A DNA stretch of 64,000 nt from Rebecca billardiae RCC1528 (taxonomy: Eukaryota > Protista > Haptophyta), in contig OZ251248.1 in NCBI GenBank assembly GCA_965240325.2, positions 1-64,000 of the forward strand, written 5' to 3'. Below the pieces are notes generated by a model. The model was not told the origin of the DNA. It saw only the letters and a list, made by a program, of their open reading frames with translations, and did no database searches. Every line of letters starts with the position of its first letter. Positions within the stretch are counted from its first letter, which is position 1. Of the stretch, positions 1 through 53,741 are shown piece after piece. Both the position numbers and the translations under genes were made by a program.

Positions 1-82
1 CCTAACCCCTAACCCTAACCCCTAACCCTAACCCTAACCCTAACCCCTAACCCTAACCCTAACCCTAACCCTAACCCTAACC

Positions 83-123
<41 letters not shown>

Positions 124-214
124 CCCTAACCCTAACCCTAACCCTAACCCTAACCCTAACCCTAACCCTAACCCTAACCCCTAACCCTAACCCTAACCCT
201 AACCCTAACCCTAA

Positions 215-250
<36 letters not shown>

Positions 251-401
251 CTAAACCCTAACCCTAACCCTAACCCTAACCCTAACCCTAACCCTAACCC
301 TAACCCTAACCTAACCCTAACCCTAACCCTAACCCTAACCCTAACCCTAACCCCTAACCCTAACCCTAACCCTAACCCTAACCCTAACCCTAACCCTAAC
401 C

Positions 402-442
<41 letters not shown>

Positions 443-742
443 CCCTAACCCTAACCCTAACCCTAACCCTAACCCTAACCCTAACCCTAACCCTAACCCT
501 AACCCTAACCCTAACCCTAACCCTAACCCTAACCCTAACCCTAACCCTAACCCTAACCCCTAACCCTAACCCTAACCCTAACCCTAACCCTAACCCCTAA
601 CCCTAACCCTAACCCTAACCCTAACCCTAACCCTAACCCTAACCCTAACCCTAACCCTAACCCTAACCCTAACCCTAACCCTAACCCTAACCCCTAACCC
701 TAACCCTAACCCTAACCCCTAACCCCAACCCTAACCCTAACC

Positions 743-796
<54 letters not shown>

Positions 797-1060
797 CCCT
801 AACCCTAACCCTAACCCTAACCCCTAACCCTAACCCTAACCCTAACACCCTAACCCTAACCCTAACCCTAACCCTAACCCTAACCCTTAACCCTAACCCT
901 AACCCTAACCCTAACCCTAACCCTAACCCTAACCCTAACCCTAACCCTAACCCTAACCCTAACCCTACCCTAACCCTAACCCTAACCCTAACCCTAACCC
1001 TAACCCCTAACCTAACCCTAACCCCTAACCCTAACCCTAACCCTAACCCTAACCCTAACC

Positions 1061-1101
<41 letters not shown>

Positions 1102-1181
1102 CCCTAACCCTAACCCTAACCCTAACCCTAACCCTAACCCTAACCCTAACCCTAACCCTAACCCTAACCCTAACCCTAACC

Positions 1182-1213
<32 letters not shown>

Positions 1214-1432
1214 CTAACCCTAACCCTAACCCTAACCCTAACCCTAACCCTAACCCTAACCCTACTAACCCTAACCCTAACCCTAACCCTAACCCTAACC
1301 CTAACCCTAACCCTAACCCTAACCCTAACCCTAACCCTAACCCTAACCCTAACCCTAACCCTAACCCTAACCCTAACCCTAACCCTAACCCTAACCCTAA
1401 CCCTAACCCTAACCCTAACCCTAACCCTAACC

Positions 1433-1473
<41 letters not shown>

Positions 1474-2608
1474 CCCTAACCCTAACCCTAACCCTAACCC
1501 TAACCCTAACCCTAACCCTAACCCTAACCCTAACCCTAACCCTAACCCTAACCCTAACCCTAACCCTAACCCTAACCCTAACCCTAACCCTAACCCTAAC
1601 CCTAACCCTAACCCTAACCCTAACCCTAACCCTAACCCTAACCCTAATAACCCTAACCCTAACCCTAACCCTAACCCTAACCCTAACCCTAACCCTAACC
1701 CTAACCCTAACCCTAACCCTAACCCTAACCCTAACCCTAACCCTAACCCTAACCCTAACCCTAACCCTAACCCTAACCCTAACCCTAACCCTAACCCTAA
1801 CCCTAACCCTAACCCTAACCCTAACCCTAACCCTAACCCTAACCCTAACCCTAACCCTAACCCTAACCCTAACCCTAACCCTAACCCTAACCCTAACCCT
1901 AACCCTAACCCTAACCCTAACCCTAACCCTAACCCTAACCCTAACCCTAACCCTAACCCTAACCCTAACCCTAACCCTAACCCTAACCCTAACCCTAACC
2001 CTAACCCTAACCCTAACCCTAACCCTAACCCTAACCCTAACCCTAACCCTAACCCTAACCCTAACCCTAACCCTAACCCTAACCCTAACCCTAACCCTAA
2101 CCCTAACCCTAACCCTAACCCTAACCCTAACCCTAACCCTAACCCTAACCCTAACCCTAACCCTAACCCTAACCCTAACCCTAACCCTAACCCTAACCCT
2201 AACCCTAACCCTAACCCTAACCCTAACCCTAACCCTAACCCTAACCCTAACCCTAACCCTAACCCTAACCCTAACCCTAACCCTAACCCTAACCCTAACC
2301 CTAACCCTAACCCTAACCCTAACCCTAACCCTAACCCTAACCCTAACCCTAACCCTAACCCTAACCCTAACCCTAACCCTAACCCTAACCCTAACCCTAA
2401 CCCTAACCCTAACCCTAACCCTAACCCTAACCCTAACCCTAACCCTAACCCTAACCCTAACCCTAACCCTAACCCTAACCCTAACCCTAACCCTAACCCT
2501 AACCCTAACCCTAACCCTAACCCTAACCCTAACCCTAACCCTAACCCTAACCCTAACCCTAACCCTAACCCCTAACCCTAACCTAACCCTAACCCTAAAC
2601 CTAACCTA
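1..2608 (+). repeat. Telomere, (CCCTAA)n
   Basis: About 2.6 kb of tandem CCCTAA from base 1, the orientation expected at a left chromosome end. Scattered small indels mostly in the first ~1.65 kb. Confidence 0.99.
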
Positions 2609-14310: not shown

Positions 14311-14337
14311 GGTTAGGGTTAGAGGTTAGGGTTAGGG
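14311..14337 (+). repeat. Short interstitial telomeric tract (TTAGGG orientation)
   Basis: GGTTAGGGTTAGAGGTTAGGGTTAGGG exactly at the satellite/copia junction. Confidence 0.9.
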
Positions 14338-14640
14338 GTCTCGTCATAGTCCATGCCCTCGATGTGCGTGAAGCCCTTGCCCATGACGCGGGCCTAGAAC
14401 CGCCTGATGCTTGTCACGCTTGATGTTGAAGACGGGCGCTGCCTCGAGCGTGCGCATCCCCGGCTTGCGCGGCACTTCCACCCACGTGTTGCTGGCCAGG
14501 ATGGAGGCGTACTCGGCGTCGAGAGCGGCGGCGAAGCGCGTCGCGTGCGGGCCGTTGAGTGCTTGCACCGCCGTTGGCGTGTCCGAGTGTCAGATGGCGA
14601 GCAGGAGCGCGTAGATGCGCGGCAGCGTGGAGTAGGTACG
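14337..14640 (-). mobile_element. Ty1/copia reverse transcriptase fragment (degenerate)
   Basis: QALNGPHATRFAAALDAEYASILASNTWVEVPR...VFNIKRD, then after a frameshift/stop ARVMGKGFTHIEGMDYDET, the start of a copia RT domain. Truncated at the telomeric tract. Confidence 0.88.
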
Positions 14641-17270: not shown

Positions 17271-17280
17271 GCAGCGCCCG

Positions 17281-17690
17281 GCAGAGCCCGCTCGAGCGGT
17301 GGGGCGTGAGCCGAGCGCCGCGAGAGGCAGGGCCCGCTCGAGCGGTGGGGCGTGAGCCGCGCGCCGCGAGAGGCAGGGCCCGCTCGAGCGGTGGGGCGTG
17401 AGCCGCACGCCGCGAGAGGCAGAGCCCTTGAGCGGAGGGGCGTGAGCCGCGCGCCGCGAGAGGCAGAGCCCGCTCGAGCGGTGGGGCGTGCGCCGCGCGC
17501 CGGGAGAGGCAGGGCCCGCTCGAGCGGTGGGGCGTGAGCCGCGCGGGGCAGGGCCCGCTCGAGCGGTGGGGCGTGAGCTGCGCGCCGCGAGAGGCAGGGC
17601 CCGTTCGAGCGGTGGGGCGTGAGCCGCGCGCCGCGAGAGGCAGGTGAGCCGCGCGCCGTGAGGCAGGGCCCTCGAGTGATGGGCGTCACG
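17281..17690. repeat. 46-bp minisatellite, ~9 units
   Basis: Unit GCAGGGCCCGCTCGAGCGGTGGGGCGTGAGCCGCGCGCCGCGAGAG starting at 17281, 17327, 17373, 17419, 17463, 17509, 17548, 17594 and 17640 (partial). Confidence 0.93.
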
Positions 17691-22531: not shown

Positions 22532-25151
22532 TCAGCGCTGCTCGAGCGCGCCCTCGCGCGCCGCGCGGTCGCCAAACTTGTCCTGCGCGCGGCGCGGCGC
22601 GGGGCGGGCGGCACGCCTCAGCCGTCAGCGGCGCGCGGCGGCGCGCGGCGGCGCGCGGCGGCGCGCGGCGGCGCGCACCGTCTGCGCGATGAAGAGGTCG
22701 GCGTACGGCGCGTCCTGCCGCAGCGAGATGAGCCCGTCGCTCGCGAGCACGAGCAGCTCCTGGAAGCACCCGGCGACCACGCGCTTCTTGCCCGCCGCGC
22801 CGCGCGCGCTCGTGTCGCTCGCGAGCGCCCGGTACGAGAGCGGCGCGCCGCCCGCGTGCTCAAACGTGCGCCGCAGCAGCCCGAACATCATGCGCGTGCG
22901 CTTGGACCAGCTGGCGGCGCGCGCGCCGCCGGGCGCGGCCTCCTCGTCCTCCGCGCCCTCCTCCGCGCCGTCGACGGTGGGCAGCGACACGCCGTACGAC
23001 GTGGCCTCCTGCGCGCGCGCGCGCGCAGCGGCCAGCGCTCAGCGCGCGGGCGCGCGCGCACGGACGCGCGCGCGCGCGCGCACGGACGCGCGCGCGCGCG
23101 CGCGCGCGCGCGCGCACCGGCCGCTCCGCCGCGTCGCCGTCGGGCGGCGGCGGCTCCGCCGCGTCGTCGGGCACGTACTCCTCGGCGGGGTCGTACGGCG
23201 GCGGCTCGTCCTGCGCCCCAAACTCGAGCGCGCCGCCCTCGGGCCCGTCGCGCAGCGGCGGCTCGTCCGGCCCGTCGGGCGCGGCGCCGCCCGGCGTGGG
23301 CGGCAGCAGCGCGCCCGAGCCCTCGCCGTCGGCGGAGACGCGGCGGCGCTTGGCGGAGGAGCGGCGCGCCGACTCGGCGAGCGCGTGGTACGGCCGCGCC
23401 GCGTACGCCGCGCGCAGCGCCTCCGCGTCGCCGCGCACGATGGGCTGCGCAAAGAGCGCGGCCGCGTCCGCGCCGTGCAGCGCGGCGAGCCGCGCGCGCA
23501 CGTACGCGCTCCCGCCGCCGCCCTCGGCCTCGTCGGCCTCGTCGGCGTCGGCGTCGGCGTCATCGGCGGCGTCGTCGTCGGCGGCGGCGCGGCGCACCGT
23601 CGCCGACGCGTCCTTGAGCCAGCGCGCCATCTCCTCCGTGCCGAGCTGCGTGTCCGCGTCGACGTGCAGAGAGCCGCGCGGCGCGACGCGCTTGCGGCCC
23701 TGCGCGCGCCGGCCCGCCGCGGCGGCGCCGCCGTCGACGCCGACGGTGGGCGTGGTCTGCGCGGCGAGCAGGTGGTCGGCGCCGAGCACGTCGTCCAGCC
23801 GCGCCTCCTCCTCCTCCTGCTGCTGCGGCTCGTCGCCGCCCATCGGCTCGAGCGGCGGCTCGGCCTCCGCCTCGGGCGGCGGGCCGTCGCCGTCCTCGGC
23901 GCCGTCGGGCGCGGGCAGCCCGAGGAGCTGGCCGCTGAGCGAGAGGCGGTACACGCCGTCCGCCTCCTCCGCGATCGGGATGTCAAACGTGCCTGCGCCG
24001 CCGCGGCGCGCGGCGCGCGTCAGCTCGGCGCGCGGCGCGGCGAGGCGGCGCGCGCCGCGCGCGCCGCACCGTCCGGGTCGAGGCCGCCGCGCGGCGCGGC
24101 GCTGTTGTCACGCAGCGTCTCGACCTCGGCGTCGGCAAAGTGCTCGTACGCGCCGTCGTCCCGCCCAAACTCGAACGCGTCCGCCTCCGCCCCGCCCTCC
24201 GCGCCGCGGCCGCCGTGGTGCGCGCCGAGGCCGAGGCCGAGCGCGCCGTCGTCGTCTGCGAGCGTCAGGTCGCGCGCGCGCGCGCCGTCGTCCGCCGCGT
24301 CGGCGCCCGCGGCGGAGCCGCGGCGCGCGGGGCGGGCGGCCGAGCCGGGCTCGCCGTCGCCGCGCGCGCCCAGCGCCGGCAGCTCGAGCGGCTCGAACGG
24401 CGCGTCGAGGAAGTCTGCGCGCCGCGCCGCGCCGCAGCCGTGAGCGGTGGCGCGGCGGCGCGGCGGCGCGGGGGCGCGCCGCGCCGCGCGCACCAAAGTC
24501 GAGGTCGAGCGCGCTGGCCGTCGGCGCGGCGGTCGGGTTGGTCACCTCGTCGAACCGCCGCGTCGCGTGCTCCGGCGCCAGGTCGACGGGCGCGGGCTTG
24601 AACGCGAGGCGCACCTTGACGACCGCCTCGCCCGCGTCCTCGAGCAGGTACTCGGCCTGGCGCGCGTGGATGCGCACGATGCCGAGGAGCAGGTGGCCCG
24701 AGACGCGCAGCGCGAGGCCCGACTCCTTCTTCACCATCATGCCCACCGAGTCCGCCACGTTCACGCGCATGATCTGCGCGCGCGCGCGCGAGAGAGAGCG
24801 AGGGAGCGAGCGGTGCTCGGCCGGCGGGCGCATGCGGCGGCGCGCGGCCGCGGCGGCGCGGCGGCGCGGCGGCGCGGGCGCGCGCGCGGCGGGCGCGCGC
24901 ACCTGCGTCTTGCCCAGCTTCTTCTCCATGTGCGCCGCGACCCAGACGTGCCCGAGCGCGCCCTTCTTCGCGATGATCGAGTTCTGCGCGCGCCCCGACC
25001 CGGCCGCGCGATCGCGCGCGCGCGGCGCAGCGCGGCGGCGGCGTGCGGCGGTGAGGCACGCGGCGGGCGCGCGGCGGCGCGCGCAACGCGGCGCGCGCCG
25101 CGGTGCGCCGCGCGCGGTGCGCACCGCGTAGGATGACTGCGACTGCGCCAT
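22532..25151 (-). CDS. RAD21: Cohesin alpha-kleisin (Rad21/Rec8 family), 7 exons
   Basis: N-domain IIAKKGALGHVWVAAH...LALRVSGHLLLGIVRIHARQAEYL; C-terminal winged helix KRVVAGCFQELLVLASDGLISLRQDAPYADLFI. Exons 25151-25125, 24983-24903, 24773-24494, 24414-24070, 23992-23118, 23008-22679, 22582-22532, all GT-AG. Rad21 versus Rec8 not resolved. Confidence 0.92.
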
Positions 25152-25364
25152 GGCCGCGCGCTGCCCTCCCCTCGCGCGCTGGCGGCGGGTTGCTCAGTGG
25201 TGTGTTGACCAGTGCGCCGGCCGCACCGCGCGAGTCGAGGCGCCAGCCCTCCACCGGAACGGCCGGGCCCAGCCGGACTCTTCATCCATTTCTTTTCCTT
25301 CTGGCTTTATTGTCTGTCTGAATTCCGCGCGCGGCGACGCGGCTCCGGGAATTCACTCACCGGG

Positions 25365-26705
25365 CTAGCGCCGCCGCGCGCGGCGCGAGAGCGGCAGCGG
25401 CGCCTCGGCCTGCTCGGGCGTGATGCCGACCTGCGTGACCGACCCCTTCGTCACCACCTTCGCGTTCGGCGACTTGCGGTAGCGGCACGGCCGCGCGGGG
25501 TCGGCCGAGTCGGCGGCGGCGGCGACGTCGGCAAACGCCCAGCTCGGCGGCACGGGCAGCCCGCCCTTGTGGCCCGTCGCGACGCCGGCGCCCCTGGAGG
25601 CGAGCGGGCGCGGCGGGCAGTGGCGCGCGGCGGCGAAGACGTGCGCGCGGCGCACGCGCGAGAAGTGCGCGTCCGCCGGCAGCCCCTTCGCCGCCTCGGC
25701 GGGCTCGAGCGGCGCGCCGTGGGCGGTGCGGCCGCTCTTGGACTTGTCGTGGAAGGCGAGCGTGTTCTGGTGCACCGCGCCCTGCGAGAACCAGTTGTCC
25801 ATGTGCAGCGGCTCGCGCCAGTTGAAGATGCGCAGCGGCACGTCCGCCAGCCACCGCCGCAGCGCGTACCCCACCCACACGTCCTCCGAGAGCAGGTTGC
25901 CGAACTTGGCCGCGATGCGCGGGTCGTTGACGCCGCGCGCCTTGGCGCGCTCCACAAACGCGCGCTTGTCGCACGCGGGCACGGAGGCGTTGGCCGCCTC
26001 GCGCGCGGCGGGCGAGGCGAGGAGCGCGCGGAGCACGGCGGGCGCGAACGCGACGAACGACGCGCCGGGGAACGGGAACGGCCCGTAGCACAGCGCGCTC
26101 GCCGCGCCCTTGCACGCGGCGGCGCGCGCGCCCTCCGCGCGGCTGCCCGTGAAGCCAAACCCGACGGGGCAGCCGACCTCGGGGAGCCAGGAGAACCACT
26201 GCCACAGGCCGAAGACGGCGTGGGCGGAGGCGTTGAACGGCGCGCTCGTCGCCATGCGCAGCAGCCCCGGCGGGTGCAGGAACACGTCGTCCTCGCACTT
26301 GGCGATGAAGCGCGCGCTCGGGTAGCGCCGCAGCGCCCACCCAAACCACACCCACTGCTTGGTGAAGGCGGCGCGCTGGCGGCCGCCCGTGTAGTTGAGC
26401 AGGAGCACGTCCGACGCGCCCTCCGCGAGCAGCAGCTCGCGCGCGCCGCGCGGCATGTCCACCAGGAAGCGCGCGTCCACCTGCGGCGGCACCGAGCCGC
26501 GCCCGAGCCACGTCTCGCGGATGTCGCGCCGCAGCGGCGCGTTGTCCGGGCCCGACACGATGCCGATGGCGAGCAGGACGGCGGGGAAGACGCGCGGCAG
26601 CGACGCCGACGCGAACACGTGCAGGTGCGCCGGCGTCGGCGCCGCCGGCCGCCGAGGCGGCGCGCGCGCCGCCGCGGTGGCGTTGGCGGCGGCGCTGCTG
26701 GCCAT
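25365..26705 (-). CDS. GT31-like beta-1,3-galactosyltransferase
   Basis: LAIGIVSGPDNAPLRRDIRETW, RFLV, FIAKCEDDVFL and SEDVWVG motifs; single exon. Start codon uncertain, no clear signal anchor. Confidence 0.82.
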   Translation of the reverse strand: MASSAAANATAAARAPPRRPAAPTPAHLHVFASASLPRVFPAVLLAIGIVSGPDNAPLRRDIRETWLGRGSVPPQVDARFLVDMPRGARELLLAEGASDVLLLNYTGGRQRAAFTKQWVWFGWALRRYPSARFIAKCEDDVFLHPPGLLRMATSAPFNASAHAVFGLWQWFSWLPEVGCPVGFGFTGSRAEGARAAACKGAASALCYGPFPFPGASFVAFAPAVLRALLASPAAREAANASVPACDKRAFVERAKARGVNDPRIAAKFGNLLSEDVWVGYALRRWLADVPLRIFNWREPLHMDNWFSQGAVHQNTLAFHDKSKSGRTAHGAPLEPAEAAKGLPADAHFSRVRRAHVFAAARHCPPRPLASRGAGVATGHKGGLPVPPSWAFADVAAAADSADPARPCRYRKSPNAKVVTKGSVTQVGITPEQAEAPLPLSRRARRR

Positions 26706-26775
26706 GCCGGATGGGTCTCGTCAAAAGTGCTCCTCCCTCGCTTGTACCTGGTACTGGTAGGTGCGGCGGTTAACG

Positions 26776-27433
26776 ATGGCGGCCGCGGCGCGCGAGGAGG
26801 ACATCGACGCGCTGCTCGCCGAGATCGAGGGCACGCTGGGCGCGGGCGAGGCGGCGCACGGGCCGGCGGGCGCGGCGGCGCTCCCGCCGCCCGCGCCGCC
26901 GCCGCCGCGCGCGTCCGCGTCCGCGTCCGCCGCGCCCGCGCCGAGCGGCGGCGGCGGCGGCGGCGCGGCGGCGCCGGAGGACGAGCTCGACGCGCTGCTC
27001 GGCGAGCTCGCGATGCAGGGCGGCGCGTCGCCGCCGGCCGCGCCGCCCGCGCTCGGCCGCTCCGCCGCGCCGGCCGACGCGCCCGCGCCCGCCGCGCGCC
27101 TGCGCGCCAAGGGCGGCTCGAGCTCGGCGCTCTCGCTCTCGGAGCCGCCGCCGCGCGTGGACGGGCTGGCGTACGGCCGCACGGCGATGCGCTGCACAAA
27201 GTGCGCGCCCCGCGCGCTCGGCCGCGCGCGCGGCGCGCGCCCCCCCGCGCCGCCCGACCGCGCGCCCCGCCTCCTCCGCCGCCTCGCAGGTGCGACTTCC
27301 GCGTGTACGTGTTCGACGCGCGCGCGTGGGCGCACGGGCCGGGCGGCGTGGACTACATGCTGCTGCGCAACTACATGCCCGACGCGAGCCGGCTGCTGCA
27401 CGCGCTCAGGCCCGCCGTGGGTGCGCGCGCGCG

Positions 27434-42492: not shown

Positions 42493-45400
42493 TCACTGCG
42501 CCGGCGGCGGCACGTACGCGCGCACGCGCCTGAGCAGCTCGGCGTGCTCGACCACGCCGCCGCCCTGCGCCGCCTGCCCCGCGCTCAGGCAGAGGACCGC
42601 GTACTGGCCGGTGCCGCCAAAGATGAGGTCGTGGCTCAGCGCGTGCGTGCTGGTGCTGCCGCCGCCGGGCGCGGCGCCCTCGGCGCCGGGCGGCGCGCGG
42701 AGCGTCACCTCGGCGCGCGCGGTGAACATGCCCCACGCGCTCAGCAGCAGCTCGAACGGCGGCTGCGTCTGCTCCACCGCCTTGCGCCGCATGCTCGGGT
42801 GCAGCCGCCACACGACGCGCTCGATGCGCGCCAGCGTGGCCGCGGCGCGCGCGCCGCCCGCCTCGCCGCCCGCGTCGTGCGGCCGCACAAAGAGCGCGAC
42901 GGCGTGGCGCAGCTTGTACCCCGGCCGCGAGAAGGAGGGCGCGAGCGGGCGGCGCGCGGCCTCGTGCCCGTTGCCCAGCTCGAGCCCGACCAGGTCGGCG
43001 CCGCGCGCGTCCGCGCCCTCGAGCCCGGCGCGCACGCGCGACAGGTCGGCGCCGAGCCCGCCGCGCGCGTCGGCGTCGGCGTCGGCGTCGTCGTCGTCGT
43101 CGTCGTCGGCGGCGCCGGGCTCGAGCGCGACGGCGGTGCACAGCGCGCGCGCCGCGATTCGGCTCGCCCGCGCGCCCTCCTCCTCCGCCGGCGCCGCCGC
43201 CCACGCCGCGCCCTCCGCGAGCGCGGCGCGCGCGTCTCGCTCGTTGGCCGCCGCCTCGACCGCCAGCGAGTGCGCGCCGCCGAGCGCGGCGCTCAGGTCG
43301 GCGTGCGCGCGCGCGTGCGCGTCGGCGGCGTCGGCGTGGCGGCCCTGCGCCTCGAGGGCGAGGCCGAGCCACGTGCGCGCCGCCGCGGCGCGCGGGTGCG
43401 CCGGCCACAGCGCGCCCTCGAGCTGCGCCACGCCGCGCGCCAGCTCCGCCTCCGCCTCGGGCGCGCGGCCGAGCGCGAGCGCGCAGAAGCCGCGCTCGCA
43501 CAGCGCGCCGCACAGCGCCGCCGCCGCGCCCGCGTCGCGCGCGTCGGCGTCGGCGGCGGCGCGCTCGAGCAGCGAGACCGCCTGCGTGAGCAGGCCGTGC
43601 GCGCGCGCGTGCTCGTGCCGCGCGCGCAGGTTCGCCGCGAGCGCGACGAGCACGTCGGCGAGCGCGCTCGCGCTCGGCGGCGGCTCGGCGGCGCCGCCCG
43701 GCGGCGCGCCGCCCGCCGCCGGCCGCGCCGTCGCGGCGGCGTGCAGCGCCCGGGCGGCGCGCTGCAGCGTGGCCATCTCGAGGCCGAGGTCGCCCTCGCC
43801 CGAGCACGCGCGGCCGAGCTCGCGCAGGCACGCGCCCAGCCCGCCGCTCGGCGGCTCGGCGCGCGCGCGCGGCGGCAGCAGCAGCAGCGCGGCCGCGCAC
43901 GCGACGCGCACGGCCGCGCCCGCCTCCGCGCCGTCGGACAGCAGAGACGCGCACGCGCACAGCCGCGCGCCCGCTTGGCGCGGCTCGTCCCACCCGCCGT
44001 CGGCGGCGAGCTCGGCGCGGATGCGCGCGGCCGGCGGCGGCGGCGCCTCGCCCTCGCCCGCGCCGCCGCCCTCGCCCAGCGCGGCGCGCAGCCGCTCGAT
44101 CGCCGCGGCCGCGTCGTCGCCGAGCGCCGCGACGCGCGCCGCCTGCGCCGCCTCCTCCGCCTCGAGTGCTGAGAGCTGCGCGCGCGCGGGCTCGAGGCCG
44201 CGCTCGGCGTCGGCGCGGCGCACGAGCGCGGCCGCCCACTCGACGAGCGCCGCCGCGCCCGCGCTCACCTTCGCCACCTCCGCCGCCGCCATCTCGGGCC
44301 GCGCGAGCAGCGCGCGCAGCGCGTCGAGCTGCGCGCCGCTCAGCTGCGCCGAGTCCAGCGCAGCCAGCCGCTCCGCAAGCGCGCCGTCCGCCAGCAGCTT
44401 CCTCGAGCCGGACCAGTCCGGCCGCTCGGGCTTCTCGAGCTTGCGCGAGGCCGACGCGCCGGGCGGCGCGAGCGGGCGCACGCCGAGCGCGGTCGCCACC
44501 GCCTGCGCCGCGAGCTCCACCTGCGGCGGCGGCTTGGCGAGCCCCTTGAGCTCGGAGAGGCGCGTCTTGGAGAGCGAGCCGAGCGCGCGCTCGGCGGCGG
44601 CGGCCGCGTCCGCCGCGGCCTCGAGCGCGGGCGCGGCCTCGGAGACGAGGGCGGCGTGGCGCGCGGCGCGCGCGGACGTCTCCGCCGCCGCGGCCGAGCG
44701 CTGCGCCGCGAGCGACGCGGCGAGCTCCTTCGCCGCCGCCGACGCCTCGGCCGCGCCCTCGACGGCCGCGCCGCCGCCATCGCCGCCCGCCGCCGCCGCC
44801 GCCTCGGCGGGCGCGCCCGCGGCCGCGCCGAGCGGCGCGTCGGCGGGGTCGGCGGGGTCGGCGCCGTGCGCGGCGGGCGGTGGTGCGGCGTCGAGCGCGT
44901 CGTCGACGAGCCGGAGCAGCGCGCGCACGCACTCGGCGCTGCTCTCGTCGCCGCGCGCGCGCTGCGCCGCGCCGCCGCCGCCGCCCGCGGCCGCGGCCGC
45001 GGCGGCGCGCAGCGCGCGCAGCACGAGTCGCAGCGCGTCGGCGCGCGAGCCGCCGCCGCCGCCCTCGCCCTCCGCCGCCGCCTCCGGCCGGGGCTCGCGC
45101 TCGGCCTCGGGCGGCGGCGGGGCGGGCTGCTCCGCGCGCTCGGCGGCGGGCGCGCCGCCCGCCGCCTCCGCCTGCCCGCCGAGCGCCGCGGCCACCACCT
45201 CCGCGCCCAGCGCCGCGAGGGCGCGCGCCATCGCGCCGTAGCCGCCCGCGCCGGCCGCGCGCCAGTGGCCGAGGAGCGTCAGCCGACGCCCGCCGCCGAG
45301 CGCGTGCCGCGCGGTGCGCCACTGCAGCAGCGTCGCGCCGAGCTCGGCGCGCTCCCCCGCCGCCGCGAGCTGCGCCGGCAGCACGCGCGCGCGCCGCTCG

Positions 45401-47877
45401 GCGTCCGCGCGCGCCGGCGGCGCCGCGGCGGCGCCGCCGCCGCTTCCGAGGTTTGCGCCGAGCAGCCGCGCCAGCCGGCGGTGCGCGGCCGCGCGCTCGG
45501 CGGGCGCGCGCAGCCAGAGGGCGGCGGTGGCGGCGGCGGCGGCGCGGTGGTGGAAGGTGAGCAGGCCGCCGCTCGGCGGCCCCGCGGGGCGGAGGAAGGG
45601 GCGCAGCGCGAGGCACACGCGCGCCCAGCGCGCCGCGCTCAACGGCTCCGCGCCCTCCGCCTCCGCCGCGCCCTCCGCCGCGCCCTCCGCCGCGCCGCCG
45701 CCGCGGCCGGTGTCGGCCGGCTGCGGCACCCCGCCCACGCCCGCGTGCACGTCGGTGGAGGCGAGCGCGTCCCTGAGCTCAACCTCGAGCAGCCCCGCCT
45801 CCCCCGCCGCGTGCAGCAGGCACAGCGTGTCGCGCACCAGGCCACCGCTCCGCGGCTGCGGCTGCGGCTGCGGCTGCGGCTGCGGCTGCGGCTGCGGCTG
45901 CGGCTGCGGCGGGGCGGCGCCGGCCTGGTGGGCGGCGTCCGCCTCGTCGTCCTCGAGGGCGATGCGGCGCAGCGCGGCCATCGTCGCGTTCTCCAGCCCG
46001 TCGGGCAGCGCGCGCACCGCCGCGCCCAGCGACTCGAAGCTGCCGTGCAGCCGCAGCTCCTCGCAGCACACCGCCAGCCACAGCGGCACGCCCGCGGACG
46101 CGCGCCCGAGCAGCGCGGCCATGTGCTCCGCGTCCAGCGCCTTGTTGTACCGGCCGAGGTACGCGCGCACGAGCTCGGCGCGCGCCTCCGCGCCGAGCTG
46201 CGCGAGCGAGAGCTCCGACGCGCCGCCCTCCGCGCCGCCGCCGCCGGCGCGCGCGCGCTCGGCCCACGCGCCGTGCGCGCCGCTGCGCTCGAGCGCAGAC
46301 GCGAGCACGACCAGCCCCGGAGGGGGCGGCATCGGCACCCACGCGGCCAGCAGCTGCGCGGGCGCGCCGTCCGCGTCGAGCTGGTCGAGCGCGTCCACGA
46401 AGAGGACCAGCGCGCCGCCGCCGCCCGCCGCGCGCGCCACCGCCGCCGCCTCGAGCGCCGAGCGCGCCGCGGCGGCAATCTGCTCGAGCGGCGCGCCGCC
46501 CAGCTCGGCGCGCAGCGCGGCGCCGCCGGGCAGCGCGGCGCGCAGCGGCGGCGCGCGCAGCAGCCGGAGCAGCAGCGCGCGCGCCGAGGCCGAGCGCCCG
46601 CCGCCCGCGCCGCAGAAGTGCGCGAACGCGCGGCCGCGCCGCTCGGCGGGCGCGTCCGCCGCGCACCACTCGCGCGCCACCGCCGCCAGCACGCTCGACT
46701 TGCCCAGCCCCACGCTGCCCGTCAGCAGCAGCGCGCGCCCGCTGCCCGCGGCGGCGGCGCGCACAACGCCGAGCTCGCGCGCGCGGCCGAGCACCGACGC
46801 GCCGCGCGCCGCCATGAACGCCTCGTGCGCCGCGCCCTCCTCCGCCTCCTCCGCCTCCTCCTCCGCGCCCCCGCCGTCTGCTCCCGCCGCCTCCGCCTCC
46901 GCGCCCTCCGCCTCCGCGCCCTCCGCCTCCTCGGCGTGCGTGGGGAAGTGCTTAGGGCTAGGGCTAGGGTTAGGGTTAGGGCTGGGGTTAGGGTTAGGGT
47001 TGCCCTCCGCCTCCTCGGCGTGCGTGGGGAACTGCGCGGCGATGCGCTCCTGCAGCCACGCCTGCACGCGCGCGCCCAGGCTGCCCGCGCCGCCCTCCAG
47101 CCCCGCGAGGCGCAGCTTGCCGCTGCGCGCGTCCACGCCCGCCGGCGTCGGCTCGTACGCCAGCACGCGGCCGAGCGGCCCGAAGCGGCTGCGCACGCGC
47201 GCGCGCAGCTCCGCGATGTGCGCGGCCGCGAGCGGCGCGCGCTCGACCCAGCCGGGCGGCAGCGCGGCCTCGTCCTCCGCGCGGAAGCGGCGGAGCGCGA
47301 AGAAGGCGTTCGGCCCGCCCGCGCGGTACGCGCCGTGCAGCACCTCCATCGCCGTCACCGAGAAGCCGTCCACCCAGCCGTACGCCGCCGCCGCCTCTGC
47401 GGGCACGTCCGCAGCCGCGGGTGCCCAGCCGTACCGGCTGCCGAGCAGGTTGAGAAAAAACGGCTCGCCGTTGGCCTCGCGGCAGCGGTCGAGCTCGCCG
47501 AGGCACGCGGCGAGCGTCTGCGCCGTGCTCGCGTCGCGCTGCACCCCCCAGCGCAGGTCGCACTCGAGCACGTGCACGCGCCGCCCCTCCGCCCACGCGC
47601 GCACCGCGGGCAGCACGCGCTTGACCAGCAGCTCGCGCTCGGCGTGGAAGTCCACAAACGTCGAGGAGACGAACACGCGCACCACGCGCCAGCCGCGGCC
47701 GCGGAGCGGGACGGGGGGCGGCGGCGGGGGCGGCGTGGGCGGCACGCTCGCCTCCGCCACCGCCCACGCCGCCGCCACCGCCGCCGCCGCCGCCTCCGCG
47801 CTCAGCGGCGAAGCGGGCGGCGGCAAAGCGCCGCCGCCGTGCGACGGCGCGGGCGGCGCGCCGTGCGCCGCGCCGCC

Positions 47878-47908
<31 letters not shown>

Positions 47909-48421
47909 CCGTCGCCGCCGTGCGCGCCGCCACCGTCGCCGCCGTGCGCGCCACCGCCGCCACCGCCGCGCGGCGAGGGCGCGCGCCGCGCCTTGGCATC
48001 GCCCCCGCCGCCCGACGCGCGCCGCGAGCCGCCACCGCCGCCGCCGCCGCCGCCGCCGGCCGAGGGCGATGCCGCGCGCGCGCCCGCGCCGCGGCCCGCG
48101 CTGCCGGCGCGCGCGGGCGAGGCCGCGCGCGCGGGCGAGGCCGCGCGCGCGGGCGAGGCCGCCCGCGCGGGCGAGGCCGCCCGCGCGGGCGAGGCCCCGC
48201 GCGCGGGCGAGCCGCTGCGGCGGTGCGGCCGGCCGCCGCCCTCGGCCGCGTCTGCCGGCGCGCGGCCGATCGCTCGCGTCGCGCGCAGCGGCGCGCCGGC
48301 GCCGCCGCCGGCGCCGTCGGCGCCGGGCGGCGCGGGGAGCTTGGCCGCGGCGCGGCGCTGCGCCCCCGCCGCGCCCGCGTTCGCGCTCGCGCGCGGCGGC
48401 CGGTTCGGGCTGGGCGAGCGC

Positions 48422-48453
<32 letters not shown>

Positions 48454-48807
48454 CCCGGGCGGCGAGGGCACCGCGCGCGACGCGCCGTGCCCGCTCTGCC
48501 GCGCGGGCGGCAGCGAGACGCTCACGCCGCCGCCGCGGTGGTAGGCGTGCAGCGCCTCCACGCGCGCGCTCAGCTGCGGGCGCACCTCGCGCAGCGCCTG
48601 CTGGCCCGGCGTGGGCCGCGAGCGGCCGGGCAGGAAGGCTCGGTGCGTGCCGTCGCGCGCCGCGCGCGCCTGCGCGCCGCTGCGCGGCGGCGAGCGCGGC
48701 GGCGCGGGCGGCGAGCTGCGCCGGCGGGCGGGCGACGCGCTCCGCCAGCGCGCGGGCGAGCCCGCCTGCTCGCCGCTCGCGCGCCGACGCCTGGCCGGGC
48801 TCGACAT
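42493..48807 (-). CDS. STAND NTPase: DUF4062-NACHT-dynein microtubule-binding stalk-TPR-YEATS (TEP1/NPHP3-like core), 2104 aa
   Basis: VRVFVSSTFVDFHAERELL...DLRWGV (DUF4062); Walker A GSVGLGKS; Walker B LFVDALDQLD. MTBD-like at ~44160-44640; TPR-like helices (LWPAHPRAA, LGGAHSLA); YEATS-like at ~42600-42910. One continuous ORF. Confidence 0.88.
46952..47001 (+). repeat. Telomeric-repeat insertion inside the NACHT CDS
   Basis: 8 x (T/C)TAGGG-like units plus TT (50 bp), between 34-bp direct repeats 46918-46951 and 47002-47035. Confidence 0.92.
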
Positions 48808-49075
48808 GGTGGGGCGCGCGGCCGGGCTGGGCTTCTTCGTTCGGGCGCTGAACCGGATGGAAATGACGAAGCCGACGACGGAAACGACGGCCGTCGGGTC
48901 ATCACAGTACGTTCAATGTCGAGAGCATGCAACGGTCGTCATACGCGCTACAGTAGGCCGGCGCGGACGGACGCGTGGGCGAGAGGCCAGCCAGTGCGAG
49001 ACGGCGGCGCGCACACGGCCAGGTCGCAGCCACAGGCAGCGCCCGGACACTCGCGGCTGCACTCACTCGGCCTGA

Positions 49076-49288
49076 TCAGAACTGGTCGTCGGAGCCGAGG
49101 TCGTCGCCGTCGTCGTCCTCGTCGTCGTCGTCGTCCTCCTCCTCCTCGTCCTCGTCGTCGTCGATCAGCTCGTCCTCCTCCAGCTGCTGCTGCCGGCCGG
49201 CGCCGCCGCCGATCCCCATGCCGCCGCGCGCCGCGCCGCCGCCGCCGCCGCCGCCGCCGCCCATCGCGGGCCCGCGCTCGATCTCCGG

Positions 49289-49327
<39 letters not shown>

Positions 49328-51208
49328 CTCGTCGGTCTCGTCCTCCTCCTCCCCGCTGTCCGACTCCGCCGGGTTCATCGAGCCGTGCACCACGCCCGAG
49401 TCGACGCCGTCGTCGTACCCGCCCGCGTCGCCGCGCGGCCGGCGCAGGCCCGCGCCGCCCGGCCGCTTGGTCGGGCGCGCGCGCCCGCTGGAGGAGACGC
49501 GCGAGCCGCCGCCGCCGTCGGCGCTCTCGCCGCCCGCGCCGTGCACGCCGCCGCCGTCGTGCTGCGCGTCGTTCATCAGCGCGTCGTCGATCGCCTGCTC
49601 GTCGATCTGCGCGCGGCGGCGGGCGGCGGGCGGGCGTCGGTTTGGCGAGCGGCGGTGAGCGGCGGTGAGGGCGCGGCGGTGAGGGCGGGGCGGGCGCGCT
49701 CGCGGCGGCGGCGGCGTGGCGGCGCGCACCTGCGCCTGCCCGCGCAGCACGCGCAGCTCCTCCTCGCGCAGCCGCTTCTGCATCGCCTTGAGCTGCCTGT
49801 CGTGCTCCTCCAGCCGCTCCTGCTCGGCGCCGTGCACCTTGTCCAGCTCGGCCTCGAGGAACTGCAGGTTGCGCCAGTTGCCGAGGTACAGCTCGTACTG
49901 CTTGGAGAGCGAGGCCTCGAGGCGCTCGTACTCCTCCATGAACGCGGGGCGCACGGCCTGCAGCGAGGAGAGCCGCTTCTGGTGCCGCTCCAGCTCGTTC
50001 TTCCGCTTCTCGATCTGCGCGGCGCGCGCGGCCGCGAGCGCGCGCGCGCGAGCCGCGGGCGGCGCGCGTGGGCCGGCGCCACCCGCCCGGCGCGGCCGCG
50101 CCGTGCGCGCGCTCGCTCGTTGGTGTGCGCACCTTGTTGTTGAGCGAGGCCTCGTCCTTGGAGACGTTGGCGACCATCTTCTCCATCTCCTCGAGCTGCG
50201 CGCCCATGCTCTCCGCCTGCTGCCCCAGCCGGCGCTGCACGTCGCCGATCTCGAGCGAGCGCGAGAGTGCGCGCTGGTGCGCCTCGCGCGCCTCCGGGTG
50301 CAGCTCGAGCAGCTCGTACAGCTTGGCGCTGGCGGGCGGGGCACAGCGCACGCGGCGTGGGAGGAGCGCGCCTCAGCCCGCGCGGGGCGGGCCGCGCGGC
50401 GGGCGCGTCGGCGGGGCCGCGCCCGGACTCACCCGGACTTGACAATGTCTGCGGCGAGCGCGCGCGTCGTCTTGAGGTCGGAGAACTTGGCGCCGCCCGC
50501 CGTGTCCGGGATGAGCGCCTCGTCCTCGCCGCCGCCGCCGCCCGAGACCGCCGCGGCCTCGGCCTGCTTGAACGCGTCGTACAGCACCGTCGCGATCTTG
50601 AGCAGCTCCTTCACCGCGTACCTGCGCGCACCGGCGGCGGCGGCGCGGGGCGGCGGCGCGCGGCGGCGGCGGCGGGCGGCGGGCGGCGCGCGGCGGCACG
50701 GCGTTCGCGCGCGGTCAGTGCGGCCAGCGAGCCCGCGCGCGCCCACCCAGCCGCGCCCACCCCCCACGCCCGCCCAGCGCACCGCCCGCCGCGCGCGGCG
50801 CACCCGTTCGCGGAGTAGAGGTTCTTGATGTTGAGCTTGATGCGCCCCTTGAGCAGCATCGCCTGCGCGGTCGACTTGAGGAAGTGCACGCGGTCCGACT
50901 CGGTCTCGATGTTGTCGTCGATGTCGATGGACGAGTCGTACCGGACGACGAGCCAGCCTGCACGCCGCGCGCGCCGCGCGCACCCGCACGCCGCGCGCCG
51001 CCGCCGCGCGTGAGCCACGCGCCGCCGCGCGGCCGTGCGGTGCGCACGGCGCGGCGCGCCTGCCGTGCGCCTGCGCCTGCGCGCGCGCACCGAGCAGGTC
51101 GGCGACGAGCTCAAAGTTGGGCGAGCGGAAGGACTGCACCGAGACGAGGTGCGGGTACCCGAGGGCCCGCATGATCTCGGTGAAGTTGCGCAGCTCGCGG
51201 TACGACAT
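49076..51208 (-). CDS. CLUAP1: Clusterin-associated protein 1 / IFT38, 6 exons
   Basis: [19 protein letters not shown]...[42 protein letters not shown] and an acidic tail. Exons 51208-51091, 50957-50804, 50621-50433, 50328-50133, 50014-49730, 49606-49076. Confidence 0.96.
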
Positions 51209-51372
51209 GGCGTCGCGGCGCGGCGGGGCCGGGCTGCGCCCCGCTGGCAGGTTGGGCGACCGCCACCGCTGCTCCAAGTTTCAACGTCTCGTCCGGCGCT
51301 CCGGTCGAGAGCCCGGACTCCCCCCGGCCCCCGGCCGCTGGGCTGCGCGGATTCCAGCGTGTTCACTGCGCG
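51209..51372. promoter_or_regulatory. Putative bidirectional promoter (CLUAP1 / desaturase-like gene)
   Basis: Only 164 bp between divergent start codons; inferred from geometry. Confidence 0.5.
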
Positions 51373-53307
51373 ATGGTGGCGCCTCCCCCGCCCAGCGCGG
51401 GCGCCAATGGCGCGCCGGCGGACGTGCCGGAGAAGTACCGACGAGCGGTGCGCGCGCGCGCGCGCGCCGACGGCCCCCGCCCCGCCGCGCCCCGCCCACC
51501 CGCCGCCCCTCGCCCGCCCGCGCCCCGCCGCCGCGCCGCGCCGCAGGTCGAGCTGGCGCGGCGCGACCAGACGGGCGTGCGCTGGGAGTACTTCTTCAAC
51601 CCGCTCCCGCGCTCCGCGACGAAGTGGCTCGAGTCGTGCCTCTGCGACGCGCGCGACCTGCCGATGGTCCTCCTCATCTCCAACATCTGCACCACCGTCG
51701 TGCTCGCCGCGGCCGCGCAGTACCTGCTCCTCGAGCCGGGCTCGAAATGGGGCCACGTCGTCGGCGCCGTCTACCTCGTCGCCACGACGGTGCGGCCGCG
51801 CGCCCGCCGCCCGCCGCGCGGGGTCGCTCGCCGCAGCCGGGCGCGCGCGCGGGTCTGACGCGCACGCCCACGCCGTGGCGCGCGCGGGCGGCGCACGCAG
51901 GCGCTCTTCGACGCGCGCTTCATCCTCTGCCTGCACTACGCGCAGCACCTCAAGCTCTTCAACCCGGCGGCGATCGGCCGGCTGCCGGCCGCGCTGCTCA
52001 ACGAGGTGAGAGCGGCGGCCGCGGGGCGGGGGCGGGGCGGAGGCGACAGGGGCGGAGGCGGACGCACGGGCGGAAGGGTGCGGGCGGAGGGCTGGCTGCA
52101 GCCCGAGCGCTTTGCTGGGGCTGACCCGGCGCGCGCCGCGCGGCGCTCGGTGCGCGCAGGTGCTGCCCACGGTGCTCGCGCCCCTCTTCGGCATCCCCTC
52201 CGGTGCGCGCGCGCCGCGCGCGCGCTGGTGCAGGGATGCACTTTTTGCACCCCTGCACCCTAACCCTAACCCCCCTAACCCTAACCGCGCGTTGGTGCTG
52301 GTGCAGGGATGTACTTCTTGCACCACGTGGCGATGCACCACGTGGAGGACAACCTCTTCCCGCACGACCTCTCCTCCACCATGCCGTACCAGCGCGACTC
52401 CTTCCTCGACTTCCTCAAGTACTGGGCCACGTGAGTACTCGTTACCCACGCAGTACCCATGTGCCAGTACCCACGCGCACCCGTCCATTCCCCTTGCGCG
52501 CACACGGCGCACGCGCGCGTGCTGACGGCGTGCCCGCCCCCCCCCCCCGCCCGCCCCGCAGCTACGTGAGCGGCACCGCCGTGTACCTGCCGCTCTACGC
52601 GCTCTCCAAGGGCAGGCCCCGGCTGGCCGCGTACTCGGCGCTGCTGCTCGGGAGCTGGGGCGCGCTCGTGTGCGGGGCGCGCGCGCTGCACCCGACCGCG
52701 GCGCTGTGGACGCTGGTGATCCCGGTGCTCAAGTCCTCGCTCACGCTCATGTTCGGCAACTTCTCGCAGCACATCTTCGTCGACCCCGCCGCGCCCGAGT
52801 GCGACTACACCTCGACGTACAACTGCATGGCGGTGCTGGACAACCGCTTCACGTTCAACGACGGGTACCACATCGTGCACCACCTGAACGCGCGCAAGCA
52901 CTGGAGCGAGATGCCGCAGGCGTTCGTGGACAACCTGCCCAAGTACGAGGCGCACGAGGCGCTGCTCTTCGAGAACCTCTTCTTCTTCGACATCGGCATC
53001 CTCGGTGCGCGCGGCGCGCGCGAAGCGAAGCGCGCGCACGGCGTGCGCGCGCGAGCGCGTCGCCGCGCGGCGTGCGCCGCGCCCGGCTCTCGCGCGCGTG
53101 ACGTGCGCGGCGATGGCGGCGTGTGCGCCGCCCGCGGCGCGCGGCGCAGTGATGACGGGCCAGTGGTCCAAGCTCGCGCGGCACGTCGTGCAGCTGAGCG
53201 ACACCCCCAAGTCCGAGGCGGAGATCATCCGGCTGCTCAAGCGGCGCGTGCAGCGCATCCCCTGGGCGCCCACGCCCGACGGCAAGCCGAAGAAGGCGCT
53301 GGCGTGA
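51373..53307 (+). CDS. Membrane fatty-acid-desaturase-superfamily protein, 7 exons
   Basis: His boxes HYAQH, HHVAMHH and HIVHH, plus FGNFSQH and FNDGY. Exons 51373-51447, 51547-51789, 51901-52005, 52160-52202, 52307-52430, 52562-53004, 53150-53307. Confidence 0.88.
52257..52286 (+). repeat. Telomeric-repeat insertion in intron 4 of the desaturase-like gene
   Basis: ACCCTAACCCTAACCCCCCTAACCCTAACC between 28-bp direct repeats 52224-52251 and 52297-52324. Confidence 0.9.
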
Positions 53308-53741
53308 GCGCTGGCGTGAGCGCTGGCGTGAGCGGGCCGCGCGGCGGGGGGCGGCGGGCCGAGCACGCGCCCGCGCTGGCTTGGCTACGCGCGCGGATCG
53401 CCGATCGCTGCCGGCCGCAGCCGCCGTGCTCAGTCCGACGAAGGCGCGGCCGAGTGATGATGAGAACGACGATGGTACCGAGTCATCCTGGTCGTCCTGA
53501 TCCGCGTGTGTTGAGATGAAATCAGAAAATCACCGCGCATCATCAAATAATGCCGCAACAAAATAACGCGGCCGAGCGCAAATAACGCGGCAAAATGAGG
53601 ATGAGATTCGTGAAGCCGCGCCGCAACAAAATAACGCGGCGGCGCGATCTGCTTTTTCGCGCCATCAAGCGCTGGCCGCAGCGCGCGAAGAAGCGGCCGC
53701 CAAGCAAGGGCGCGCGCTCGGCCCGAGCCGCACCCGGCGCG

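What the first reader, a model, noticed from the sequence alone, without database searches (positions are those of the whole stretch)
46918..47035. Telomeric repeats written into a coding exon between 34-bp target duplications, removable as a perfect GC-AG intron
Seen: a 50-bp telomeric tract sits between two 34-bp direct repeats (one mismatch) of host coding sequence. The net gain is 84 bp and in frame (FPTHAEEAEG-NPNPNPSPNPNPSPSPKH-FPTHAEEAEG). The duplicated segment contains AG|GC on the sense strand, so splicing from the first AG|GC to the second would restore the ancestral mRNA exactly. Known: telomerase can insert repeats at repaired double-strand breaks, and duplication of AGGY can create introns. 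Inference: a recurrent 'duplicate plus telomeric fill' repair or insertion process operates inside genes here and may seed new introns or NP-repeat linkers. A second case lies 5 kb away.
Basis: partly seen in the sequence, partly recalled or inferred. Interest (0 to 1): 0.85.

Follow-up and report, generated by a model that had tools for sequence, protein, structure and literature searches.

The report
Telomere repeats inserted in a gene
A short piece of the organism's own telomere repeat, flanked by a 34-base copy of the host sequence, sits in frame inside a large sensor-type gene; it looks like the scar of a repaired DNA break that is now read as a floppy 28-residue protein loop, not a newborn intron.

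Summary
Two 34-bp direct repeats (46918-46951 and 47002-47035, 33/34 identical) flank a 50-bp degenerate TTAGGG tract (46952-47001). The window starts with a true (CCCTAA)n telomere. The 84 bp lie in frame in a 2104-codon minus-strand ORF (DUF4062, NACHT, dynein-stalk-like, YEATS).

The repair-scar reading holds:
- Such repeats are about 0.1 per 49.5 kb by chance.
- A second telomeric fill with a 28-40-bp duplication lies at 52224-52324.
- All 30 aligned homologues lack the 28 residues.
- Four AT-to-GC changes show the insert is not brand new.

The "perfect GC-AG intron" claim is not supported:
- The donor scores -6.6 bits and the acceptor -3.5 bits. Local introns (G|GTGCGCGC...GCGCAG|G) mostly score +7 to +13.
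- 24% of 34-nt windows in this ORF contain AGGY.
- An AlphaFold2 model places the insert in the only disordered loop.

The insert is most likely translated. No RNA or DNA reads could be obtained, so this is inferred.

It is a new member of a known kind: telomeric insertion at a staggered break with target duplication, described in mammals. It is unusual in being exonic with a long duplication.

Other readers of this scan noted more such sites on other DNA of this genome; I did not check those. Interest is moderate.

The parts
46918..46951 (-). Target-site duplication, copy 1 (second copy in mRNA order). It encodes (K)HFPTHAEEAEG and carries the one mismatch (G instead of C at 46948).
   Evidence: 33/34 identical to 47002-47035
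46952..47001 (-). 50-bp degenerate telomeric tract. The G-strand (TTAGGG) is on the + strand, so the C-strand is in the sense strand. It is read in frame as NPNPNPSPNPNPSPSPK. It has 4 AT-to-GC changes from perfect repeats.
   Evidence: The terminal telomere has 420 CCCTAA units and no CCCTAG or CCCCAG.
47002..47035 (-). Target-site duplication, copy 2 (first copy in mRNA order). It encodes QFPTHAEEAEG. Its QFP aligns with the conserved Q-[YF]-P motif of homologues.
42493..48807 (-). Host gene: an uninterrupted 2104-codon ORF for a STAND-type protein. Domains are DUF4062 (aa 377-462), AAA_16/NACHT (aa 673-884), a dynein-stalk-like coiled coil and a C-terminal YEATS domain. The insert lies at about aa 603-630, in the linker between DUF4062 and NACHT.
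   Evidence: (constant codon-position GC phase on both sides)
46942..47025 (-). Its splice signals are weak and it is probably not used.
52224..52324 (+). Second event of the same kind. A C-strand tract (52254-52284) lies between 28-bp direct repeats (2 mismatches; about 38-40 bp if one indel is allowed). It sits inside intron 52203-52306 of a desaturase-like gene and duplicates the acceptor plus 18 nt of exon.
1..2568 (+). Terminal telomere (CCCTAA)n. It shows that the inserted unit is this organism's own telomere repeat.

Best explanation
This is a lineage-specific 84-bp insertion left by error-prone repair of a staggered double-strand break (or paired nicks 34 bp apart) inside the coding sequence of a DUF4062-NACHT gene.

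Proposed steps (inferred):
- The 34 bases between the two nicks ended up on both ends, giving the target-site duplication.
- Before the ends were rejoined, about eight telomere repeats were added to the 3' end of the antisense (+) strand. Telomerase most likely added them; capture of telomeric DNA is less likely.

The total is 28 codons and the C-strand frame is CCT-AAC, so the reading frame survived. The segment is now most likely translated as a 28-residue disordered loop (NPNPNPSPNPNPSPSPKH plus a second FPTHAEEAEG). The loop lies in the variable linker between the N-terminal domain and the NTPase. It is probably not spliced out.

Shown: the anatomy, the non-chance duplication, the species' own telomere unit, absence from homologues, the weak splice signals, and the location in a disordered loop.

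Inferred: the break geometry, telomerase as the source, and translation rather than splicing.
For: - Anatomy and identity of the copies.
- Chance expectation is about 0.1 per 49.5 kb, and two of the three interstitial telomeric tracts in the window are flanked by such repeats.
- The window's own telomere has the same unit.
- The G-strand abuts the 3' end of one duplication copy directly, while the far junction is ragged. At this site it ends in a partial unit TT. At the second site it has a 6-nt filler TGCAGG that repeats the adjacent GGTGCA. This is as expected for 3'-end extension followed by end joining.
- Two of the three tracts follow a host GG that is in register with the repeat.
- Four of 26 A/T sites in the tract are changed to G/C and none of 24 G/C sites are changed. 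The terminal telomere has none of these variants. So the insert is a real, aged genomic feature.
- All 30 aligned homologues (26-33% identical over the aligned 526-residue stretch by BLASTP) lack the 28 residues, and the first copy aligns to the conserved Q-[YF]-P motif.
- In the AlphaFold2 model (mean pLDDT 84.9) the only stretch below 50 is residues 228-269, which is the insert plus the adjoining acidic run.
- The splice signals of the formal GC-AG unit are no better than background.
- Telomeric insertion at breaks with target duplication is a documented class: 4.6% of rodent loci, 16% of primate loci and 4.5% of horse loci (PMC2246262; PMC7215372).
Against: - No RNA or DNA reads could be laid on the site (one search listed no run), so translation versus splicing and the assembly itself are untested by independent data.
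- No orthologous DNA with an empty site was found. Absence in homologues is at the protein level and from distant relatives only.
- At this site the break end (...GTGC) has no base in register with TTAGGG, unlike about 75% of mammalian cases.
- A 34-bp stagger in 76% GC DNA is long for a spontaneous staggered break.
- In frame and stop-free has a chance probability of about 0.22, and 3n stop-free introns exist in this genome, so the frame argument is weak.
- The intron training set is small (18-19 introns) and was partly chosen by eye.
Confidence: 0.68

Rival explanations
1. Nascent intron. The 84 nt are removed from the mRNA as a GC-AG intron that runs from the AG|GC in the first copy to the AG|GC in the second copy, restoring the ancestral message.
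For: - The GC...AG unit exists and is exactly 84 nt.
- Its length falls within the local intron range of 77-161 nt.
- The tract offers CTAAC branch-like motifs.
- New introns elsewhere often have weak sites and arise at repaired staggered breaks with direct repeats (Daphnia, PMC4202315).
- In the neighbouring desaturase-like gene a telomeric tract does lie inside a working intron.
Against: - The donor GCGGAG scores -6.6 bits. It has C at +2 and A at +5, against a local GTGCGC consensus with G at +5.
- The acceptor GGAG|G scores -3.5 bits. It has G at -3, against the local CAG.
- Both scores are near the median of random GY and AG sites in the ORF.
- GC content is 64%, against 83-94% for most local introns.
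- All 19 training introns use GT donors.
- AGGY in a 34-nt window is a 24% coincidence.
- In frame and stop-free is not needed for an intron.
Confidence: 0.1
2. Retroelement-like insertion. Telomerase, or a related reverse transcriptase such as that of a Penelope-like element, primed at a single nick and copied its RNA template. A second-strand nick some tens of bases away then produced the long, variable target duplication. This would be target-primed reverse transcription, not repair of a pre-existing double-strand break.
For: - The geometry matches. The G-strand continues the 3' end of one duplication copy.
- The duplication lengths are long and variable: 34 bp here and 28-40 bp at 52224, with 8-34 bp reported in unchecked scan notes. 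This is typical of target-primed reverse transcription and unlike a transposase.
- All three tracts begin in the TTAGGG register.
Against: - Nothing but telomere repeats is inserted. There is no element body, poly(A) or template-flanking sequence.
- The far junction at the second site carries a templated filler typical of end joining.
- The two models give the same product and cannot be told apart from the sequence.
Confidence: 0.12
3. Assembly or sequencing artefact, for example a chimeric long read that carried telomeric sequence into the gene.
For: No independent reads could be examined. The window is subtelomeric, and its terminal array shows single-base irregularities typical of long-read data.
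Against: - Chimeric reads do not create a precise 34-bp target duplication.
- The tract carries four AT-to-GC substitutions that are absent from 420 terminal repeat units.
- The insert keeps the frame.
- A second, differently built example lies 5 kb away.
- Short-read contigs of two public runs match another part of this window at 100%, so the assembly is sound there.
Confidence: 0.03
4. In-situ origin without a break. A tandem duplication of the 34 bp arose by slippage, and a CCCTAA-like microsatellite later expanded between the copies.
For: The surrounding coding sequence is rich in short tandem repeats with 15-bp periodicity.
Against: - The filler is the exact telomere unit of this organism.
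- It is out of phase with the local 3- and 15-bp repeats.
- The same 'duplication plus telomeric fill' recurs at an unrelated site.
- No seed for CCCTAA exists in the single-copy sequence.
Confidence: 0.03

Closest known systems
Short interstitial telomeric sequences inserted at repaired double-strand breaks in mammals, 'duplication' subclass (Nergadze et al. 2004/2007, PMC2246262; Santagostino et al. 2020, PMC7215372)
   Same: [quoted passage not shown] This is attributed to a staggered break. Older copies accumulate mismatches.
   Different: - Here the host is a very GC-rich protist-type genome.
- The duplication is long (34 bp).
- The insert lies in a coding exon, in frame. PMC7215372 reports no human ITS in exons.
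- At this site there is no microhomology in register at the break end.
- By the scan's unchecked notes, the duplication class may be the common one here rather than a 5-16% minority.
Intron gain by repair of staggered breaks with filler DNA and flanking direct repeats (Daphnia neointrons, PMC4202315), and the AGGT tandem-duplication model of intron origin
   Same: Filler DNA lies between direct repeats of exon sequence. A duplicated AG|GY could in principle give both splice sites.
   Different: - The Daphnia repeats are 4-12 bp and the inserts are shown to be spliced.
- Here the splice signals are background-level and splicing is unshown.
- The filler is telomeric, which that paper does not mention (0 occurrences of 'telomer').
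Target-primed reverse transcription by non-LTR and Penelope-like retroelements
   Same: A 3' end is extended by a reverse transcriptase from an RNA template, and target duplications are variable, often tens of bases. I recall this from the literature; it was not checked here.
   Different: There is no element body. The only 'cargo' is the telomerase template repeat.

Membership tests
Interstitial telomeric sequence inserted at a repaired break (with target duplication) | The tract consists of the species' own telomere repeat. | tested here: met
   The terminal array at 1-2568 is (CCCTAA)n. The tract is 8.3 TTAGGG units with 4 substitutions.
Interstitial telomeric sequence inserted at a repaired break (with target duplication) | Direct duplication of the target flanks the tract, beyond chance. 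| tested here: met
   33/34 identity. Expectation is about 0.1 such repeats per 49.5 kb.
Interstitial telomeric sequence inserted at a repaired break (with target duplication) | An empty site exists in an orthologous locus. | tested here: inconclusive
   No orthologous DNA was found. All 30 distant protein homologues lack the 28 residues.
Interstitial telomeric sequence inserted at a repaired break (with target duplication) | Bases at the break end are in register with the repeat (signature of telomerase priming). | tested here: not met
   The break end is ...GTGC|TTAGGG, with 0 bases in register. The other two tracts in the window follow GG. About a quarter of mammalian cases also lack it (PMC2246262), so this does not exclude membership.
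Interstitial telomeric sequence inserted at a repaired break (with target duplication) | Telomerase, rather than captured telomeric DNA, made the tract. | not testable with these tools
   The telomerase RNA of this organism is unknown here. No template-flanking bases could be recognised.
Spliceosomal intron (GC-AG), newly born | GY...AG boundaries exist whose removal restores the frame. | tested here: met
   An 84-nt unit GCGGAG...GAGGAG is present. AGGY occurs in 24% of 34-nt windows of this ORF.
Spliceosomal intron (GC-AG), newly born | The splice signals resemble those of the genome's working introns. | tested here: not met
   The donor scores -6.6 bits and the acceptor -3.5 bits, against mostly +7 to +13 for 19 local introns. 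The candidate lies at the 44th and 69th percentiles of background sites. Its GC content is 64%, against 83-94%.
Spliceosomal intron (GC-AG), newly born | Removal from mRNA. | not testable with these tools
   The look-up of sequencing runs listed no run. No transcript-derived protein fragment was found.
Transposable element or introner insertion | An element body (terminal repeats, ORF, conserved multi-copy sequence) with a fixed-length target duplication. | tested here: not met
   The insert is telomere repeats only. The duplication lengths differ between the two sites: 34 bp versus 28-40 bp.

The most novel reading that the evidence does not exclude
The site is one product of a frequent, genome-wide process in this lineage. 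In it, telomerase acts like a retroelement at nicks or staggered breaks inside transcribed genes, always extending the transcribed (antisense) strand, and leaves 8-40-bp target duplications. This would make telomerase a regular source of new protein linkers (NP/SP repeats), of intron extension and branch sites, and occasionally of new introns. That would be a gene-shaping role for telomerase not described in any organism.
Probability: 0.2. Interest if true: 0.8.

Novelty: new member of a known kind. Interest (0 to 1): 0.42.

Why it matters
The site shows that telomere-repeat addition during break repair, known from non-coding mammalian DNA, can also hit a coding exon and survive as extra protein sequence. 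It is a clean, datable example of how a disordered linker can grow in one step.

The scan's other, unchecked notes describe similar sites. If they hold, this genome would be a good place to measure how often telomerase takes part in internal break repair. It would also show what break geometry it prefers (long staggered ends) and whether the strand bias relative to transcription is mechanistic or selective. For this site the evidence gives no support to the intron-birth claim.

Tried and rejected
**Reads.** The look-up of sequencing runs on 46600-52500 listed no run, and its cap is one call, so read laying could not be used. Two runs, ERR14847148 and ERR14847151, were later found through the look-up of encoding contigs. 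They hold 100%-identical, genome-colinear short contigs of another gene in this window. I did not pass them to read laying, because that tool asks for ids from the look-up of sequencing runs.

**Orthologues and empty site.**
- A word-indexed protein search with residues 375-900 found only distant relatives, at most about 50% identity over short stretches.
- A 311-residue piece around the insert found nothing.
- The exhaustive representative search gave at most 56% identity.
- Proteins of 545-1156 residues were not covered by the two word-indexed searches.

**Metagenome scan.** A scan with a 24-mer beside the insert gave one hit, a chance match in an unrelated bacterial-looking contig.

**Organism.**
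- Diacronema lutheri has 73% GC (PMC8379373) and was my guess.
- The nearest named homologues of the host protein are TEP1-like, NWD or NPHP3-like proteins of Trichoplax, Hydra, Ptychodera and Pelomyxa. They say nothing about taxonomy.

**Literature.** I found no report of exonic, in-frame telomeric insertions or of telomeric filler in new introns.

**Rejected readings.**
- A better cryptic intron around the tract: none brackets it.
- CTAAC as the local branch consensus: only 7 of 18 local introns have any CTRAY motif.
- Strand bias as evidence: only two host-gene cases in the window, p = 0.25, and the third tract abuts a dead Copia-like fragment.

Full report
**What is there.** The window has 75% GC and starts with about 2.5 kb of (CCCTAA)n, a true chromosome end. 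At 46918-47035 two 34-bp direct repeats, identical at 33 positions, enclose 50 bp of degenerate TTAGGG repeats. The boundaries are unambiguous, because the bases outside the copies differ. The G-strand is on the + strand and begins directly after the last base of the left copy (...GAAGTGC|TTAGGG). The tract ends in a partial unit (...TTAGGGTT|GCCCTCC).

**Is it more than chance?** The neighbourhood is rich in GCC-type coding repeats, but the duplicated unit contains complex sequence. I scanned 14.5-64 kb for isolated direct repeats of at least 22 bp (at most 2 mismatches) within 200 bp, outside tandem arrays. There are four:
- this one;
- one at 52224-52251, which also has telomeric fill;
- one at 53550, with AT-rich non-telomeric fill;
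- a doubtful one at 58955.

First-order Markov simulations gave two hits in 20 runs in total. Only three interstitial telomeric tracts exist beyond the subtelomere, and two of them are flanked in this way.

**The host gene.** The tract lies in a 2104-codon ORF on the minus strand (42493-48807). Long ORFs are cheap in 75% GC DNA, but this one has other support:
- It has Pfam matches on both sides of the insert, in the same frame: DUF4062 at aa 377-462 and AAA_16/NACHT at aa 673-884. It also has a dynein-stalk-like segment and a YEATS domain.
- It keeps a constant codon-position GC phase across the site.
- An exhaustive search found 8505 relatives. The named ones among the best are TEP1-like, NWD or NPHP3-like STAND proteins of animals and amoebae.

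The insert is read as NPNPNPSPNPNPSPSPKH followed by a second FPTHAEEAEG.

**Is it lineage-specific, and where in the protein?** I aligned the query with 30 homologues over the 526-residue stretch from DUF4062 to NACHT. The first copy (AAQFPTHAEEAEG) lines up with a conserved Q-[YF]-P motif. The next 28 residues fall in a gap in all 30 sequences, as does an adjoining acidic run of the query. One homologue has an unrelated insert nearby. An AlphaFold2 model built on 25 of these homologues is confident (mean pLDDT 84.9). Its single stretch below pLDDT 50 is residues 228-269, which is the insert plus the acidic run, lying between two well-predicted helices. A 28-residue addition there should be harmless.

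**Age.** The tract differs from perfect repeats at four positions. All are A/T to G/C changes (4 of 26 A/T sites, 0 of 24 G/C sites). The 420 perfect units of the terminal telomere include no CCCTAG or CCCCAG. The variants are therefore most simply later substitutions under this genome's GC pressure. With the one mismatch between the copies, this makes the insert a real and not brand-new feature, and it argues against an assembly chimera.

**Intron or protein?** I built a simple codon-usage Viterbi model that required only GT/GC...AG. From its output I took 19 introns of the window. They share a sharp dialect: G|GTGCGCGC (sometimes GTGAG) at the donor, GCGCAG|G at the acceptor, lengths of 77-161 nt and mostly 83-94% GC.

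The only splice pair that the duplication can phase is GAG|GCGGAGGGC...CGCCGAGGAG|GCG.
- Its donor scores -6.6 bits and its acceptor -3.5 bits. Leave-one-out scores of the real sites are mostly +7 to +13.
- 44% of all GY sites and 69% of all AG sites in the same ORF do as well or better.
- The donor lacks both the T at +2 and the G at +5. The acceptor has G at -3.
- No stronger donor/acceptor pair brackets the tract.
- The segment has 64% GC.
- The presence of AG|GY in the duplicated unit is a 24% coincidence in this ORF.

The frame argument is weak in either direction. In frame and stop-free has a chance probability of about 1/3 x 2/3 = 0.22, and 3n stop-free introns occur here.

Taken together, I read the segment as translated. 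No RNA data were available, and the intron set is small and partly hand-picked, so I put this at about three in four.

**How it arose.** The product is the one expected when a break with a 34-base stagger is repaired after telomere repeats have been added to one 3' end. Two geometries give it:
- 5' overhangs are filled in first, then the blunt end is extended.
- A 3' overhang is extended directly and the gap is filled across. This is formally the same as target-primed reverse transcription at a nick, followed by a second-strand nick.

Several details fit 3'-end extension followed by end joining better than capture of a double-stranded telomere fragment:
- The clean proximal junction and the ragged distal one.
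- At the second site, a 6-nt distal filler (TGCAGG) that repeats the adjacent GGTGCA.
- The fact that all three tracts start in the TTAGGG register, two of them after a host GG.

These are three loci only, and at this site the break end has no base in register. What makes two nicks 28-40 bp apart in 76% GC DNA is unknown.

**Comparison with what is known.** Short interstitial telomeric sequences inserted at breaks are well documented in primates, rodents and horse. A 'duplication of the target' subclass, attributed to staggered breaks, makes up 4.6%, 16% and 4.5% of those loci (PMC2246262; PMC7215372). The latter paper notes that no human ITS lies in an exon. Intron gain at staggered breaks with filler and 4-12-bp direct repeats is documented in Daphnia, without telomeric filler (PMC4202315). 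I found no report of an exonic, in-frame telomeric insertion or of this pattern in algae or protists. This locus is therefore a new member of a known kind, unusual in its coding position and its long duplication.

**Context from the scan.** Other readers' notes on other parts of the same genome list more telomeric fills with duplications of 8, 14, 26 and 32 bp, several of them 'in frame'. Follow-up agents concluded that tracts in genes almost always have the C-strand in the transcript. I could not check these. Of the other readers' notes I tested only the second site, the GTGCG intron dialect and the host-gene domain architecture, all in my own window. Both host-gene cases here have the C-strand in sense, which is not significant on its own. 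The third tract, at 14313, joins the 182-bp subtelomeric satellite to a truncated Copia-like fragment.

**Limits.**
- No reads of any kind were obtained, and no empty site at the DNA level.
- Telomerase involvement and the break geometry are inferences.
- The recurrent-process claim rests on two loci that I verified plus unchecked notes.

Noticed in passing
window 52203-52306: Intron 3 of a desaturase-like gene holds the second telomeric fill. The duplication copies the acceptor GGTGCAG|GG plus 18 nt of exon. The upstream copy is a decoy acceptor whose use would shift the frame, because the spacing is 73 nt. Removing the event leaves an intron of only about 31 nt, far below the local 77-161 nt. 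So either sequence was also lost in the event or the ancestral intron was unusually short.
   Followed up: partly
window 14313-14338: A third interstitial tract (TTAGGGTTAGAGGTTAGGGTTAGGGG) lies exactly at the junction between the 182-bp satellite array and a truncated, frameshifted Copia-like reverse-transcriptase fragment (...KGFTHIEGMDYDET). No flanking duplication is seen. It looks like a rearrangement joint filled with telomere repeats.
   Followed up: partly
window 2616-2827: Directly inside the terminal telomere lie about 12 copies of an 18-bp unit (GGTAAGGGTTAGGGAAAT, or ...CGCAGG in the first copies). Their telomere-like part is in the opposite orientation to the terminal array.
   Followed up: no
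window 6085-14294: A subtelomeric satellite of about 43 copies of a 182-bp unit (also periodic at 368 bp), about 89% matched between copies.
   Followed up: no
window, 19 introns listed: The introns share a sharp dialect: G|GTGCGCGC (sometimes GTGAG) donors, GCGCAG|G acceptors, 77-161 nt, mostly 83-94% GC with (GC)n bodies. Only 7 of 18 contain any CTRAY branch-like motif.
   Followed up: partly
window 53550-53646: A 29-bp direct repeat (ATGCCGCAACAAAATAACGCGGCCGAGCG) with a 39-bp AT-rich, non-telomeric fill that partly repeats the unit. This may be another 'duplicate plus fill' repair scar. It lies between the desaturase-like gene and the next gene.
   Followed up: no
window 42493-48807 (minus): The host protein has an unusual architecture: DUF4062, NACHT, a segment matching the dynein microtubule-binding stalk, and a C-terminal YEATS domain. 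The first 370 or so residues are low-complexity and may not all be coding.
   Followed up: no
L002, L003 (= window 24866-26965): Logan short-read contigs of runs ERR14847148 and ERR14847151 are 100% identical and colinear with the window, introns included. Public DNA runs of this very organism therefore exist, although look-up of sequencing runs listed none for my stretch.
   Followed up: partly
window 17280-17644: A 46-bp GC-rich minisatellite of about 8 copies.
   Followed up: no
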